IMG/VR virus record: IMGVR_UViG_3300005613_000002
Coordinates: 186,001-250,000 of that record
Reading direction: 5' to 3' (one strand)
Length of the DNA stretch: 64,000 bases
The translations under genes were made by a program, and so were the position numbers. The notes under the pieces were generated by a model, which searched no databases, was not told the DNA's origin, and worked only from the letters and a program-made list of their open reading frames with translations. Positions within the stretch are counted from its first letter, which is position 1. Each line of letters begins with the position of its first letter. This document shows, piece by piece, positions 13,999 to 43,389 of this stretch.

Positions 13999-14027
13999 AG
14001 TAACATAATTGAGCAATGTACGTATAA
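13999..14027 (+). promoter_or_regulatory. ECF-type phage promoter (AGTAAC variant)
   Basis: AGTAAC-N16-CGTATAA; spacer identical to 14699 promoter. Confidence 0.75.
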
Positions 14028-14556: not shown

Positions 14557-14694
14557 ATGGGAGCAATTAATTTACGGGATGAATATATCAATAAGATATT
14601 ATCCAACGATGATAATGATAATGATGACAATGAAGGATTTTTAGAATCATTACCATTGAGTGAACTTAAAACATTAGCTGAAGATTGTTCATAA
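14557..14694 (+). CDS. small acidic protein, 45 aa
   Basis: MGAINLRDEY...; not in ORF track. Confidence 0.5.
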   Translation: MGAINLRDEYINKILSNDDNDNDDNEGFLESLPLSELKTLAEDCS

Positions 14695-14698
14695 TTTT

Positions 14699-14727
14699 TG
14701 TAACATAATTGAGCAATGTACGTATAA
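14699..14727 (+). promoter_or_regulatory. ECF-type promoter of non-coding RNA cluster
   Basis: TGTAAC-N16-CGTATAA followed by about 400 nt without a credible ORF. Confidence 0.85.
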
Positions 14728-14732
14728 TAATA

Positions 14733-14862
14733 TAACAGTGAATAGCATAATGGAGTACGATAAGCTAAGTACAGGATGCGCAGGACTTTAAGTTTTATTT
14801 TTAAATGCATGTGGAAATAAAATTGTCGCTGAGAAGTGGGGTTGAATTCCCCAACACTGTTA
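14733..14862 (+). ncRNA. tRNA-like RNA with insertions in D-loop and anticodon loop (nominal anticodon TTA)
   Basis: Acceptor TAACAGTG/CACTGTTA; TAGCATAATGG...ATGC D-arm; CAGGA-CTTTAA then 34-nt hairpin insert then TC(G)CTG; T-arm TGGGG-TTGAATT-CCCCA. Confidence 0.6.
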
Positions 14863-14865
14863 AAC

Positions 14866-14924
14866 GGTATTGAGTGAAGTTGTTTTGGAATTCACACCAG
14901 TAGGTTCGAAACCTGCCGATACCA
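14866..14924 (+). ncRNA. 59-nt tRNA-like RNA lacking one arm
   Basis: Acceptor GGTATTG/CGATACC + A; T-arm GTAGG-TTCGAAA-CCTGC; only one other hairpin GTGAA/TTCAC. Confidence 0.65.
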
Positions 14925-14936
14925 CACCAAAACCAA

Positions 14937-15060
14937 CCGAAAGGATGCATTCTGTTTCGGCAAGGGTTATACTCTGGGGTTCTGCTTACCCTTTAAAGCA
15001 GGAGTATAAAGAAGTTGTGGGCATTATTAAGGGACACTCTTGATACGAAACAACTTCTTT
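14937..15060 (+). ncRNA. structured RNA segment (hairpin, pseudoknot, long hairpin)
   Basis: CCGAAA/TTTCGG; TTATACTC/GAGTATAA enclosing CTGCTT/AAGCAG; AAGGGT/ACCCTT; AAAGAAGTTGT/ACAACTTCTTT. Confidence 0.55.
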
Positions 15061-15118
15061 GAAATTAATTAAAAATATTTGTCTGTCACTATACTTTAAA
15101 TTGTCGTTTAGTTGTGTG

Positions 15119-15150
15119 AAATGCCGTATAGAAATGTACGGTATTTTTTT
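15119..15150 (+). terminator. terminator of ncRNA cluster, abutting next promoter
   Basis: AAATGCCGTATA-GAAA-TGTACGGTATTT plus U-tract. Confidence 0.8.
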
Positions 15151-16045: not shown

Positions 16046-16080
16046 AAGTGTCAGTCCCGTTAAGACTGGCACTTTTTTTT
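16046..16080 (+). terminator. intrinsic terminator abutting next promoter
   Basis: AAGTGTCAGTC/GACTGGCACTT plus U-tract. Confidence 0.85.
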
Positions 16081-16108
16081 GTAACATTAATTAAAAATTT
16101 ACGTATAA
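16080..16108 (+). promoter_or_regulatory. ECF-type phage promoter (1 of 3 tandem)
   Basis: TGTAAC-N16-CGTATAA. Confidence 0.8.
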
Positions 16109-16192
16109 ATAAGTGGTCGGCAACCTAAAGTTGTGGAAAGAATAAACCTTACTATGGATATAATTGATCTAATAAGCATTATTTAAATTAAC

Positions 16193-16221
16193 TGTAACCT
16201 TTTTTAATTAAAAACGTATAA
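16193..16221 (+). promoter_or_regulatory. ECF-type phage promoter (2 of 3 tandem)
   Basis: TGTAAC-N16-CGTATAA. Confidence 0.8.
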
Positions 16222-16267
16222 ATAATCGAAATCACAATTATTCTATTTAAAAAATGTTTTGATTAAT

Positions 16268-16296
16268 TGTAACATTTATATTTAATATACGTATAT
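16268..16296 (+). promoter_or_regulatory. ECF-type phage promoter (3 of 3 tandem)
   Basis: TGTAAC-N16-CGTATAT. Confidence 0.8.
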
Positions 16297-16329: not shown

Positions 16330-18654
16330 ATGGAAATTAATTTACTAGAATTAAGTACACAAGGTGTTGAAAGTACAACCACTGCAAGAAAAATGGGAAT
16401 GTCAAAGAATGCACAATCAATGGTATTCCAATTGTTTACAAAAAATGTATATTCTAATCCAATTGGTACAGTTGTACGTGAAATTACTTCCAATTGTTTT
16501 GATAGCCATGTTGAAGCCAAAGTTAAATCTCCTGTACTTATCAAGAAAACCTATGATGAACAAACTAAAACACATTATATATCATTTATTGATTTTGGTG
16601 TTGGTATGTCAGAAGAAAGGATTTATGAGATTTATGGTGTATATTTTGAAAGTACCAAACGTGTTGATAATACACAAATTGGTGGTTTTGGAATTGGTGG
16701 TAAAACTCCATTAGCATATAAACGTTCAACAGGTCAAGGTGATGGTGAATATGATAATAGCTTTTATATTATCACTAATTATAATGGTACTCGTTATTAC
16801 TATTGCATATATGAAGGTGCTGATGCTCCTGTAATTTCCCCTTTACATTCTGAACCAACAACAGAAAGAAACGGAACTGAAATTCGTATTCCAGTTTTAG
16901 AAAAAGATATGGATGACTTTGCTAAAGAAATGGTACGTCAACTTTATTATTTTGAAGATGTTATTTTTGAAGGTTTTGAAGATGCTTGGAGGCATGGTGA
17001 AACCTTATCAAATGAGTATCAAATATTCAGAGGTAAAACATTCTTATTTAGAGGTGACGATTATTTGAGCAATGTACATATATGTTTGGGTAGAGTTGCT
17101 TACCCAATTGATTATTCTGTTTTAGGTTTATCTTCTGGTGAATATAATTTACCAGTTGCAATTAGACTTGAAGTTGGAGATTTAAATGTTACAGTTTCAA
17201 GGGAAAGTATTGATTATAGTGAGTCTACAATCAAGATGTTAAAAAAGAAATTGGTTGAGGTGAAAACTGAAATTATTGGAATGATGGTGAAACAATATGA
17301 AAATATTGTTACCCTTGAAGATTATTTCAAAATGAAAACCGATTTTGGAAACTATACTTTTAGCAATGGGAAAAGTATTTCAGTTGGAAATGTTGTTAAA
17401 GAAAAAGATATTGATTTTACAAATTTCAATTTCAGTTTCATGAAAATGCCAACAGATAAACAATTGTTTAATTTGTTCTTCAATGTTAAATCTTATGGTA
17501 AAAAACCTAATAGAAGTCGTTATGGTAGTAGTAGTAATGAATTCGAAGGTGGTTATAAAGAATTACTTTCAAGTTCAAACCTTTATCATTTTAATAACGT
17601 TTTTAATCGTAAGGTTATTAAACAATCTTATTTAAAATCAGAACACATATTGTACCATATCATTAATCGTGAAAATTTGTCACAACCACATTTGCGTCAT
17701 AAGATTACTGAATTGTTCAATGTACATTTAGATTCACTTGTTGATGAAAATGGTGTTCCTGTTCAATTTGTTCAATCATTAATGGCAATGCAGGATGAAT
17801 ATTTTACCATTGTACAAGATCAAACTGTATGTTACGATACTTTGGAAGTTCCAGAAGATTTTATTGCAGAAAGAAAGAACCGTAATAAAATCACTGATGA
17901 TATGAGGAAATTAACATTTCCAATAAAATTCATGTGTGAATATTCTGGAAGTCCTACAAGAGTAAAACTAGATCATTTATTTAAATTTAATATGCCTATC
18001 TTTTATGGTACTACTGACGATGAATTTAAATTAGAAAAAGCTAGTAAAATATATAGACATTTGTTTAATGAGAAATTTTTAATAACTGGTTATTCTGAAT
18101 ATGGTTATAACAATAGTGTTGATAAATTTAATAGAGTAGGACATGATTCAACACAAAAAGCTGGAATTATGTTTATCAGAATAGCAAAAGGAAATGTTAA
18201 ATATATGAAGTTTTGCAAAAATGCAAATCATATTGATACTGTTTATGATAAACTATTCAAACGTAAAGAAAAAGTAGTTTTGAATTATTTTAAAACTTAT
18301 CAATTATTTAATAGTTATAATAATCTGGATGATTTATATAAAGATAAACATTTTGGATTAATTGATGAAAATTGGGGTGAAACAATTATTAAACTCAATA
18401 CTGATATTACTAAAATTAAGGATTCTTTATTGGTGAAAGATTTGGAATATATTGAATCATCATTAAGTCATTATTTTAATATTGATAGAAATAAAATTGA
18501 TAAGAAATACGATAAATTAATAAAAGCTATTGATGATCTGGTAATGTTGGAAGAAGTAAATAAAGATATTGTTGAATTTATTCGTATTCCACATAGTTTA
18601 GAATATGGAAATAAAAAACTATTTCCACTATTGAAAAAAGTAATGATATTATAA
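16330..18654 (+). CDS. rIIA: RIIA-like protein with N-terminal GHKL ATPase domain
   Basis: VYSNPIGTVVREITSNCFDS, FIDFGVGMS, GGFGIGGK, SRESI; adjacent to rIIB-like gene. Confidence 0.85.
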   Translation: MEINLLELSTQGVESTTTARKMGMSKNAQSMVFQLFTKNVYSNPIGTVVREITSNCFDSHVEAKVKSPVLIKKTYDEQTKTHYISFIDFGVGMSEERIYEIYGVYFESTKRVDNTQIGGFGIGGKTPLAYKRSTGQGDGEYDNSFYIITNYNGTRYYYCIYEGADAPVISPLHSEPTTERNGTEIRIPVLEKDMDDFAKEMVRQLYYFEDVIFEGFEDAWRHGETLSNEYQIFRGKTFLFRGDDYLSNVHICLGRVAYPIDYSVLGLSSGEYNLPVAIRLEVGDLNVTVSRESIDYSESTIKMLKKKLVEVKTEIIGMMVKQYENIVTLEDYFKMKTDFGNYTFSNGKSISVGNVVKEKDIDFTNFNFSFMKMPTDKQLFNLFFNVKSYGKKPNRSRYGSSSNEFEGGYKELLSSSNLYHFNNVFNRKVIKQSYLKSEHILYHIINRENLSQPHLRHKITELFNVHLDSLVDENGVPVQFVQSLMAMQDEYFTIVQDQTVCYDTLEVPEDFIAERKNRNKITDDMRKLTFPIKFMCEYSGSPTRVKLDHLFKFNMPIFYGTTDDEFKLEKASKIYRHLFNEKFLITGYSEYGYNNSVDKFNRVGHDSTQKAGIMFIRIAKGNVKYMKFCKNANHIDTVYDKLFKRKEKVVLNYFKTYQLFNSYNNLDDLYKDKHFGLIDENWGETIIKLNTDITKIKDSLLVKDLEYIESSLSHYFNIDRNKIDKKYDKLIKAIDDLVMLEEVNKDIVEFIRIPHSLEYGNKKLFPLLKKVMIL

Positions 18655-43197: not shown

Positions 43198-43389
43198 TTA
43201 TCTACAGGTACAATTCTCAACTCTTTTCCCACAACCATCACAATGCCAATGCTCACCATACCCAGAATAATGTTTATAGGTCATTGACCATTTATTACAG
43301 GTTGGACACATACCTGTTGTGGTATGTTTACCTCTACGTTGTAACTCTTTTTCAAGTTCATTTGTTGATGCTAGTCTAAGATTTACCAT
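43198..43389 (-). CDS. small Zn-finger protein
   Basis: CPTC...CDGC. Confidence 0.65.
   Translation of the reverse strand: MVNLRLASTNELEKELQRRGKHTTTGMCPTCNKWSMTYKHYSGYGEHWHCDGCGKRVENCTCR

What the first reader, a model, noticed from the sequence alone, without database searches (positions are those of the whole stretch)
14733..14862. tRNA-shaped RNA with hairpin insertions in both D-loop and anticodon loop, nominal anticodon UUA
Seen: it begins at the promoter's predicted +1 (no leader), with a perfect 8-bp acceptor and a canonical TAGCATAATGG D-arm start. A GTAC/GTAC hairpin is inserted in the D-loop. After CAGGA-CTTTAA a 9-10-bp hairpin is inserted at about the 37/38 position, and the T-arm is intact. 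At face value UUA would read UAA, yet UAA is the dominant stop here, so suppression seems unlikely. No bulge-helix-bulge is evident. Inference: an unusual intron-containing tRNA or a non-decoding tRNA mimic.
Basis: partly seen in the sequence, partly recalled or inferred. Interest (0 to 1): 0.72.

Follow-up and report, generated by a model that had tools for sequence, protein, structure and literature searches.

The report
tRNA-shaped module of a phage ncRNA
The "tRNA with two hairpin insertions" is real and conserved, but it is not a decoding or intron-containing tRNA: it is a tRNA-derived structural module at the 5' end of a roughly 420-nt non-coding RNA of an uncultured jumbo phage, an RNA family absent from Rfam.

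Summary
The window lies in a 321.6-kb, 27.5% GC jumbo phage with about 49 tRNAs and a tmRNA elsewhere in its genome. The fold at 14733-14862 exists as described, except that the "intron" is a 13-bp coaxial extension of the anticodon stem, not an insertion in a 7-nt loop. The T-loop also has G where C56 belongs.

Homologues occur in three related metagenomic phage contigs and one distant one. They keep every helix through compensatory changes: 93.5% of cells are paired, 19 of 38 pairs change on both sides, and 0 of 500 shuffles do as well. This rules out a decaying pseudogene. The nominal anticodon is not conserved (UUA, UUA, UGA, ACA), TAA is 84% of stops, and the genome has no RtcB or splicing endonuclease. 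This argues against a suppressor or spliced tRNA.

The module is the first part of one transcription unit: promoter, tRNA-like 1, a second tRNA-like with no anticodon arm (14866-14924), a conserved core with an H-type pseudoknot, and a terminator. Relatives carry module 1, module 2, both or neither, always at the same junction.

My best reading, which is inferred and not shown, is a dispensable tRNA-mimic cassette that RNase P, RNase Z or CCA-adding enzymes recognise. It would define and protect the 5' end of the core RNA. No expression data were available.

The parts
14699..14728 (+). Phage promoter (TGTAACA ... ACGTATAAT; -10 at 14723-14728)
   Evidence: The identical 30-mer occurs at 13999, 14699 and 15150. 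The looser consensus occurs about 50 times in the genome, upstream of ORFs. The transcription start is inferred only.
14733..14862 (+). tRNA-like module 1 (the finding). Acceptor stem 14733-40 with 14855-62 (conserved core 14736-40 with 14855-59). D-stem 14745-48 with 14776-79. D-loop hairpin 14755-58 with 14769-72. Proximal stem 14781-86 with 14825-31 (bulged G at 14828). Bulge UUUA 14787-90. Distal 13-bp hairpin 14791-14803 with 14812-24, loop AAUGCAUG 14804-11. T-arm 14837-53.
   Evidence: Fold. CM R1 finds homologues at L085 2033-2162, L089 2205-2339, L101 991-1120 and L026 10804-10898. Covariation.
14866..14924 (+). tRNA-like module 2: 7-bp acceptor stem, a D-arm-like hairpin (5 bp, 12-nt loop with GG), a 4-nt linker ACCA, a T-arm with canonical UUCGAAA loop, and a discriminator A. 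It has no anticodon arm.
   Evidence: Rfam tRNA at 15.5 bits, below threshold. CM R2 finds L086 2078-2135 and L014 4124-4182. 8 of 17 pairs change on both sides.
14925..14963 (+). Start of the core: CACCA, then AAAACCAAC (predicted to pair with UGGUU/GGGUU at 14964-68), then hairpin 1 (14937-14960)
   Evidence: Alignment and RNAalifold consensus of 7 homologues. Hairpin 1 shows compensatory changes. The long-range pairs are invariant, so they are predicted only.
14964..15016 (+). Pseudoknot domain: an outer helix (AUACUC with GAGUAU) encloses an H-type pseudoknot, GGGG/CCCU crossed with CUGCU/AGCAG
   Evidence: CM R3 finds L012 3598-3646, with compensatory changes in the outer helix and in the crossing stem (CUGUU/AACAG).
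15008..15060 (+). Long variable hairpin closed by AAAGAAGUUGU with ACAACUUCUUU
   Evidence: 11 pairs, several of them compensatory in L090.
15061..15118 (+). Conserved, mostly unpaired 3' segment (…UUGUCUGUCACUAUACUUUAAAUUGUCGU…)
   Evidence: Sequence conservation. It is not an ORF, because indels break the frame between homologues.
15119..15150 (+). Intrinsic terminator hairpin plus U-run, overlapping the next promoter at 15150
   Evidence: 13 pairs, with G-C to A-U or G-U changes among homologues.

Best explanation
**What it is (shown).** The element is a tRNA-derived, non-decoding structural module. It keeps the parts of a tRNA that make the acceptor/T-arm minihelix and the D-loop/T-loop elbow. 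In place of an anticodon stem-loop it has a rod of about 20 bp: a 6-7-bp stem, a 4-nt UNNA bulge, a 13-bp stem and an 8-nt loop containing UGCA. It also carries an extra hairpin in the D-loop.

**Where it sits (shown).** It is the first module of a single non-coding transcription unit of about 420 nt: promoter, tRNA-like 1, tRNA-like 2 (acceptor + D + T only), a conserved core with an H-type pseudoknot, and a terminator. The unit lies about 1.2 kb upstream of rIIA in an uncultured jumbo phage.

**How it works (inferred).**
- The modules act as interchangeable, dispensable tRNA-mimic cassettes read by the tRNA end-processing machinery.
- RNase P would cut at the 5' side.
- An RNase Z-type enzyme would cut after the discriminator A. 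This would release the core RNA with a defined 5' end (…A|CAC…).
- The tightly folded 5' domain would protect the transcript until then.
- The released tRNA-like piece could receive CCA from the phage's own CCA-adding-family enzyme.

The anatomy, conservation and modularity are shown here. Transcription, cleavage sites and any further role are inferred.
For: **Conserved structure**
- Covariation over 5 sequences: 93.5% of cells are paired, 19 of 38 pairs change on both sides, and 0 of 500 shuffles reach this. Slid controls give 42-57% paired.
- Both "insertions" covary. The D-hairpin reads GUAC/GUAC, GGUUGU/ACAAUC, GAUUG/CAAUC or GGUAGU/GCUAUC in different homologues.

**tRNA-derived scaffold**
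- After in-silico removal of both hairpins, default ARAGORN calls a tRNA in L085, L089 and L101.
- The G18G19-type D-loop and the UUCRAUU T-loops are retained.

**Not decoding**
- Nominal anticodons are UUA, UUA, UGA and ACA. L085 and L101 are 91% identical yet differ there.
- TAA makes up 84% of stops.

**Same junction in every homologue**
- Every module, of either type, ends with a discriminator A followed by C(A/C)C and then the core's AAAACCAAC.
- Module 2 keeps only what RNase P, RNase Z and CCA-adding enzymes recognise: acceptor, T-arm and elbow.

**Modular and dispensable**
- Window: promoter-t1-t2-core.
- L085, L089: promoter-leader-t1-core.
- L101: ORF-t1-core.
- L086: ORF-t2-core.
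- L087: ORF-core.
- L090, L122, L012: promoter-core.
- These states are interleaved on the rIIA tree.
- In L086 and L101 the module lies between an ORF and the core with no promoter of its own. That is where a processing signal would be needed.

**Genomic context**
- Most of the phage's tRNA genes lack an encoded CCA.
- The genome encodes a CCA-adding-family protein.
Against: - No expression or end-mapping data exist. No RNA run was listed.
- Some relatives have the core with no module at all, so the cassette is not required.
- In the window the module starts at about +1, so RNase P is not needed there.
- In relatives the acceptor-like stem is only 5 bp, and 1-3 unpaired A's separate it from the T-stem. 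This is poor geometry for RNase P or RNase Z.
- The window's T-loop lacks C56.
- The distal 13-bp arm and its UGCA loop are strongly conserved. A pure processing signal does not explain this, and it hints at a second function.
- The core's closing helix next to the junction is predicted but has no covariation.
- Only 4 close homologues and 1 distant one were found.
Confidence: 0.5

Rival explanations
1. It is a functional tRNA mimic acting on proteins. The module, released or not, binds or sequesters tRNA-recognising factors. Examples would be a decoy for host tRNA-targeting defence nucleases, or a recruiter of tRNA-modifying, CCA-adding or elongation factors. The core RNA would be a separate or cooperating part.
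For: - The elbow and acceptor/T features are kept, and the distal arm with its UGCA loop and UNNA bulge is conserved beyond what processing needs.
- The phage is heavily invested in tRNA biology: about 49 tRNAs, a tmRNA, an Rnl1-like RNA ligase inside the tRNA cluster, and a CCA-adding-family gene.
- Further anticodon-arm-less tRNA-likes exist as separate small units: own genome 43274-43329, and L087 3618-3687 sitting between a promoter and a terminator.
Against: - There is no anticodon loop, which is the usual target of anticodon nucleases.
- The module is lost repeatedly among close relatives.
- No partner protein was identified, and no conserved neighbouring gene co-varies with presence of the module.
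Confidence: 0.2
2. It is an RNA-RNA assembly arm. The distal hairpin presents a self-complementary loop that forms kissing dimers or higher assemblies of the ncRNA, as seen in ornate phage-associated RNAs.
For: - The 8-nt loop carries a 6-nt palindrome in all four close homologues.
- The two versions differ by a paired swap, AUGCAU versus UUGCAA.
- UGCA is also present in the distant L026.
Against: - The same swap is equally explained by one more A-U/U-A pair closing a UGCA tetraloop.
- Palindromes in the core's hairpin-1 loop (AUGCAU, AGAUAUCU, GAAUUC) are no more frequent than in shuffles (per-sequence chance 0.07-0.6).
- An RNA-only complex prediction was not possible.
Confidence: 0.12
3. 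It is an intron-containing (or otherwise matured) decoding tRNA, for example a UAA suppressor, whose hairpins are removed by an unknown phage pathway such as nuclease cuts followed by Rnl1-type ligation.
For: - Removing the hairpins in silico gives an ARAGORN-callable tRNA in three homologues. Two of the four nominal anticodons are UUA.
- The phage has an Rnl1-like ligase.
- Elsewhere it has a tRNA(CUA) and other tRNA genes with odd insertions.
Against: - The nominal anticodon changes between near-identical relatives, and its register is ambiguous.
- TAA is the main stop, and no recoding signal was found.
- There is no BHB, no RtcB and no splicing endonuclease.
- The element is too short for a group I intron, and Rfam gives no hit.
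- The acceptor stem is short or interrupted in relatives, and C56 is lost in the window.
- The "intron" keeps exact length and loop sequence.
- The element is embedded in a longer RNA.
Confidence: 0.04
4. It is a decaying tRNA pseudogene with no function.
For: It departs from the canonical form (G56, spacer A, bulged G) and is lost in several relatives.
Against: - Compensatory changes occur in every helix across sequences that are 65-76% identical.
- It is retained in a distant relative whose rIIA is 36% identical.
- Its position at the ncRNA junction is fixed.
Confidence: 0.03

Closest known systems
tRNA-like processing modules linked to longer ncRNAs (MALAT1/mascRNA, NEAT1/menRNA; murid gammaherpesvirus 68 TMERs)
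   Same: A non-decoding cloverleaf-like element lies directly next to a longer or other non-coding RNA. The tRNA features kept are those read by RNase P and RNase Z. The papers were seen (PMC8457004, PMC4337559). The processing roles are from my own knowledge.
   Different: Those are eukaryotic or herpesviral, and mascRNA lies at the 3' end of its partner. Here the modules are at the 5' end of a phage RNA, come in two forms, one without an anticodon arm, and cleavage is untested.
tmRNA tRNA-like domain
   Same: Both have an acceptor stem plus T-arm plus a D-loop element without an anticodon arm, joined to pseudoknotted RNA. This resembles module 2 plus the core.
   Different: In tmRNA the two acceptor strands are the RNA's 5' and 3' ends and enclose the whole molecule. 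Here the module is closed locally. It has no G3-U70 and no tag reading frame. ARAGORN calls the phage's real tmRNA elsewhere, at genome 132007-132367, and nothing here at its default setting.
Bacterial Y RNA (YrlA) tRNA-like domain
   Same: Both are tRNA mimics with T-arm, D-arm and an acceptor-like stem, in which a long helix replaces the anticodon stem-loop.
   Different: The topology is permuted: in YrlA the ends lie in the long stem. The genome has no Ro60/TROVE gene, and Rfam gives no hit.
GOLLD / ROOL ornate phage-associated RNAs
   Same: These are large structured ncRNAs of phages that are often found next to tRNAs or contain them (literature seen).
   Different: There is no Rfam match even at E <= 10. 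This RNA is much smaller, about 220-300 nt for the core. Multimerisation is untested.
Canonical phage tRNA genes
   Same: The D-arm sequence and the overall scaffold are about 68% identical to several of the phage's own tRNAs once the two hairpins are removed. The phage tRNAs' median best identity to each other is 72%.
   Different: It has no 7-nt anticodon loop and no conserved anticodon. It lies outside the tRNA cluster and is fused to a longer ncRNA.

Membership tests
Decoding tRNA (elongator or suppressor) | Recognised by tRNA covariance or heuristic models | tested here: not met
   ARAGORN at default gives 0 genes in the window. Rfam RF00005 gives no hit on 14733-14862 even at E <= 10. 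Only -ps50 gives a call, through a different parse.
Decoding tRNA (elongator or suppressor) | 7-nt anticodon loop with a conserved anticodon among orthologues | tested here: not met
   The proximal stem runs straight into a 13-bp helix, leaving a 4-nt bulge. Nominal anticodons are UUA, UUA, UGA and ACA.
Decoding tRNA (elongator or suppressor) | 7-bp acceptor stem stacked directly on a 5-bp T-stem, with a T-loop carrying U54 U55 C56 | tested here: not met
   Only 5 bp of the acceptor stem are conserved, and 1-3 unpaired A's lie before the 3' strand. The window's T-loop is UUGAAUU. Relatives do have UUCGAUU or UUCAAUU.
Decoding tRNA (elongator or suppressor) | Aminoacylation and use on the ribosome | not testable with these tools
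   This needs acid-urea gels or tRNA-seq.
tRNA with protein-spliced (BHB) intron | Bulge-helix-bulge at the intron borders | tested here: not met
   There is a single 4-nt 5' bulge and no 3' bulge in the window, L085, L089 or L101.
tRNA with protein-spliced (BHB) intron | Splicing endonuclease and RtcB-type ligase available | tested here: not met
   PF01974 and PF01139 are absent from the complete phage genome. An Rnl1-like ligase is present. The host is unknown.
tRNA with group I intron | Self-splicing intron with a P1-P9 core in the anticodon loop | tested here: not met
   The insert is a 34-nt simple hairpin. No Rfam intron hit.
tmRNA | tRNA-like domain formed by the 5' and 3' ends, a tag ORF with a resume codon, and G3-U70 | tested here: not met
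   ARAGORN at default and Rfam find none here. Low-threshold "tags" are not conserved in frame. Acceptor pair 3-70 is U-A or A-U.
Y RNA / YrlA | Ro60 (TROVE) partner and a Ro-binding stem holding the RNA ends | tested here: not met
   No TROVE gene in the genome. The ends lie in the acceptor-like stem.
tRNA-like processing cassette (mascRNA/TMER-type) | Non-decoding cloverleaf directly next to another ncRNA in one transcript | tested here: met
   One promoter and one terminator flank t1, t2 and the core, with no ORF called in relatives.
tRNA-like processing cassette (mascRNA/TMER-type) | Cleavage by RNase P and/or RNase Z at the module borders | not testable with these tools
   No RNA-seq run was listed. 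In-vitro assays are needed.
GOLLD / ROOL | Match to the family covariance models | tested here: not met
   No hit in the window or in 7 related loci.

The most novel reading that the evidence does not exclude
The two tRNA-like modules and the pseudoknotted core form a previously undescribed class of jumbo-phage ncRNA. In this class, tRNA-derived domains are active tRNA mimics. They would hijack or decoy host tRNA-recognising enzymes or tRNA-targeting defence nucleases, or build RNA-only assemblies through the conserved UGCA loop. They would not be mere processing signals.
Probability: 0.2. Interest if true: 0.8.

Novelty: new variant of a known kind. Interest (0 to 1): 0.55.

Why it matters
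- Huge phages carry large tRNA sets whose roles are debated. This case shows that part of that "tRNA-like" sequence is not for decoding. It has been rebuilt into modular domains of a conserved non-coding RNA that standard annotation (ARAGORN, Rfam) misses.
- It gives a concrete family supported by covariation, with three covariance models. The family can be used to test whether phages use tRNA mimicry for RNA processing, RNA stability or counter-defence.
- It warns against reading such elements as suppressor tRNAs or as evidence of recoding.

Tried and rejected
- **Exact-pattern scans.** Scans of IMG/VR for the T-arms of both modules and for the terminator gave one chance hit (L009, a GC-rich coding region) or nothing.
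- **INPHARED.** blastn found no relative.
- **rIIA scan of IMG/VR with a single protein.** It found nothing. The aligned profile did work.
- **L010.** This locus lies downstream of a homologue of the 161-aa ORF. It has a non-coding stretch with a T-arm-like GGGGUUCGUUCCCC, but I could not align it convincingly.
- **Metagenome scan with a core motif.** It gave 16 loci. Only 4 were real: L093 and L098 match the L087 locus, L100 is identical to the window, and L101 is new.
- **GTDB and IMG/VR scans with the pseudoknot motif.** They gave only chance hits.
- **Hand-written T-arm/acceptor scanner.** It was too noisy in AT-rich DNA.
- **Palindromic loops in the core's hairpin 1.** They looked striking but are not above shuffles.
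- **Expression data.** No RNA run, and no run holding this phage well, was listed. I therefore did not use read laying.
- **Parent tRNA.** No specific one could be named. The best matches (His, Asp, Phe, at about 68%) are within the background similarity among tRNAs.

Full report
**Context.** The window is bases 186001-250000 of a complete 321.6-kb phage record with direct terminal repeats and 27.5% GC. The phage carries about 49 tRNA genes, a tmRNA and a tRNA(CUA), almost all in a cluster at 122-160 kb. This is far from the finding, which lies at genome position 200.7 kb. The finding sits in a stretch of about 500 nt with no plausible ORF, between small + strand genes and about 1.2 kb upstream of an rIIA homologue at 16330-18654.

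**The observation.**
- an 8-bp terminal stem;
- a linker ending in UA, then a GCAU/AUGC D-stem;
- a D-loop with GG that contains a GUAC/GUAC hairpin;
- a second stem;
- a long hairpin;
- a 5-nt variable loop;
- a 5-bp T-stem with a 7-nt loop (z = -2.9 against shuffles).

Three details differ.
- The long hairpin is 13 bp with an 8-nt loop. It is coaxial with a 6-bp proximal stem that has one bulged G, and leaves only a 4-nt bulge, UUUA. There is no anticodon loop.
- The T-loop is UUGAAUU, with G at position 56.
- One A separates the T-stem from the acceptor 3' strand.

Default ARAGORN and Rfam, at gathering thresholds and at E <= 10, do not report the element.

The promoter claim is reasonable. 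The 30-mer upstream is repeated exactly at 15150 and with one mismatch at 13999. Its consensus, TGTAACA-N15-ACGTATAAT, occurs about 50 times in the genome, nearly always 20-35 nt before an ATG. The conserved initial transcribed sequence of these promoters...TATAACA..., supplies the first bases of the 8-bp stem.

**It is one module of a longer RNA.** Directly after it, at 14866-14924, lies a second tRNA-like element. This has a 7-bp acceptor stem, a D-arm-like hairpin, a 4-nt linker and a T-arm with a canonical UUCGAAA loop, but no anticodon arm (Rfam tRNA 15.5 bits). A structured region follows, and an intrinsic terminator at about 15119-15150 overlaps the next promoter. The whole unit of about 420 nt folds better than shuffles (z = -4.0).

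**Relatives.**
- INPHARED and exact-pattern scans gave nothing.
- rIIA has many metagenomic homologues at 55-72% identity.
- I fetched their contigs and rIIA-bearing IMG/VR loci.
- I scanned JGI metagenomes with a core motif.
- The non-coding unit is present at the same place in L085, L086, L087 (the same locus was also fetched as L088, L093 and L098), L089, L090, L101 and L122.
- It is recognisable in more distant phages: L012, L014 and L026.
- L100 is identical to the window over this unit.

**Module 1 is conserved by structure.**
- A covariance model built from the window, L085 and L089 scores 117-138 bits on these and on L101. It scores 29 bits on a 95-nt version in L026, a phage whose rIIA is only 36% identical. 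It finds a single copy in the window's own genome.
- The close homologues are 65-76% identical to the window's copy. L085 and L101 are 91% identical to each other.
- On the model alignment, 93.5% of pair cells are standard pairs, 19 of 38 pairs show changes on both sides, and no shuffle of 500 reaches this. Sliding the partners by 1-3 columns drops pairing to 42-57%.
- Every helix takes part, including the two "insertions". The D-loop hairpin reads GUAC/GUAC, GGUUGU/ACAAUC, GAUUG/CAAUC and GGUAGU/GCUAUC. The proximal stem reads CAGGAC/GUC-G-CUG, UAGAAUU/AGUUCUA and CAGAGUU/AAUUCUG. The distal arm keeps 13 bp with six compensated positions.
- The caveat is that there are only five sequences and the structure was derived from them.
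The homologues show compensatory pairs, not random decay.

**It is tRNA-derived but not decoding.**
- If both hairpins are deleted in silico, default ARAGORN calls a tRNA in L085, L089 and L101, and in the window at a lowered threshold. The trimmed scaffolds are about 68% identical to several of the phage's tRNAs, which is within the similarity tRNAs have to each other. No parent can be named.
- The nominal anticodons obtained this way are UUA, UUA, UGA and ACA. They differ even between the 91%-identical L085 and L101, and the register is ambiguous because the proximal stem is 6 or 7 bp.
- TAA ends 84% of long ORFs, and treating any stop as sense gives no sign of recoding.
- The complete genome has no RtcB, no tRNA-splicing endonuclease and no Ro60. 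It does have an Rnl1-like ligase and a CCA-adding-family gene.
- A 34-nt hairpin cannot be a group I intron, and no bulge-helix-bulge exists.
- I therefore reject the intron-containing or suppressor tRNA reading, at roughly 4% residual.

**Module 2 and the core.**
- Module 2 is found in the window, L086 and L014, with 8 of 17 pairs changed on both sides. A weak paralogue lies at genome 43274-43329.
- The core is aligned in 7 sequences. It begins right after the discriminator A with CAC(G/C)A and AAAACCAAC.
- The core contains a hairpin with compensatory changes.
- It also contains a helix enclosing an H-type pseudoknot. The crossing stem is invariant in the close set but covaries in L012, CUGCU/AGCAG to CUGUU/AACAG.
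- A long variable hairpin with compensated closing pairs follows.
- The core ends with a conserved unpaired segment and the terminator.
- The predicted long-range pairs (CACGA/UCGUG, AACCA/UGGUU) are invariant and therefore unproven.
- No Rfam family matches the unit in the window or in seven relatives.

**Modularity.** The 5' end of the unit varies as follows:
- window: promoter-t1-t2-core;
- L085 and L089: promoter, a leader of about 15 nt, t1, core;
- L101: ORF-t1-core;
- L086: ORF-t2-core;
- L014: promoter-t2-core-like;
- L026: promoter-t1-like-core-like;
- L087: ORF-core;
- L090, L122 and L012: promoter-core.

On an rIIA tree these states are interleaved. For example, L087 (no module) is sister to L089 (t1), and L086 (t2) is the next branch out. 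Modules have therefore been lost or exchanged repeatedly. Each time this happened cleanly at the same junction, discriminator A followed by C(A/C)C.

**Mechanism.** The following points are shown:
- a conserved tRNA-shaped fold without a decoding loop;
- a fixed position at the 5' junction of a conserved ncRNA;
- two interchangeable versions whose shared features are exactly the acceptor/T-arm/elbow parts;
- dispensability.

From established knowledge, RNase P, RNase Z and CCA-adding enzymes read those parts and ignore the anticodon arm. I infer that the modules are tRNA-mimic cassettes that let the cell's tRNA end-processing enzymes define the 5' end of the core, and that they protect it. This would matter most where the unit follows an ORF with no promoter of its own.

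Several facts weigh against a pure processing role:
- the modules are absent in several relatives;
- the leaderless start in the window makes RNase P unnecessary there;
- the acceptor stem is short and interrupted;
- the distal arm and its UGCA loop are strongly conserved.

The loop's 6-nt palindrome switches from AUGCAU to UUGCAA by a paired change. This could mean kissing dimers, or simply one more closing base pair. Similar palindromes in the core's first hairpin are not above chance. The alternatives are a protein-directed mimic or decoy and an RNA assembly arm. Both remain open.

**Limits.** No transcript data could be found. The host is unknown. Only a handful of homologues were reachable with the capped look-ups. 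E-values from the short-calibrated models are rough.

**Verdict.** This is a real, conserved, tRNA-derived non-decoding module of a new jumbo-phage ncRNA family.

Noticed in passing
own genome 122-160 kb (outside the window), e.g. 122817-122902, 123267-123351, 130867-130950, 146751-146834, 147846-147932: The tRNA cluster holds long-variable-arm versions (84-87 nt, arm capped by a GAAA-type loop) of tRNAs that are normally short: His, Gln, Trp, Cys and Asn. For His, Gln and Asn a normal-length isoacceptor sits beside them.
   Followed up: no
own genome 159544-159617 and 132007-132367: A tRNA with anticodon CUA (amber-suppressor type) and a tmRNA are present, although stop-codon usage gives no sign of TAG recoding.
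   Followed up: partly
own genome 148144-148272: A 129-nt tRNA-like gene has canonical acceptor, D and T arms, an odd anticodon loop and an extra arm of about 58 nt. ARAGORN reads it as tRNA-Leu(UAA) with a 33-nt intron.
   Followed up: no
It lies downstream of a standard phage promoter. There is no Rfam hit, and the insertion folds no better than shuffles.
   Followed up: partly
own genome 43000-43620 (- strand): Next to tRNA-Met and tRNA-Ile(UAU) lie several tRNA-like elements that share a repeated hairpin with loop GUGUUUACAG inserted at the D-arm. One of them, 43274-43329, lacks an anticodon arm and weakly matches model R2.
   Followed up: partly
L087 3580-3735: Just upstream of rIIA in a relative lies a small stand-alone unit: promoter, a 70-nt anticodon-arm-less tRNA-like (T-loop UUCGAUU), then a terminator.
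   Followed up: no
window 16080-16270: A standard promoter at 16080 is followed by about 150 nt with no start codon before the rIIA promoter at 16268. This may be another small non-coding transcript.
   Followed up: no
own genome 14425-14811 (-) and 135924-136481 (+): The phage encodes a CCA-adding/poly(A)-polymerase-family head domain and a T4 Rnl1-like RNA ligase. The ligase lies inside the tRNA cluster.
   Followed up: no
window 14557-14694 (+): A 45-aa acidic ORF (…NDDNDNDDNEG…) lies directly upstream of the promoter. ORFs of 49-52 aa occupy the same position in relatives.
   Followed up: no
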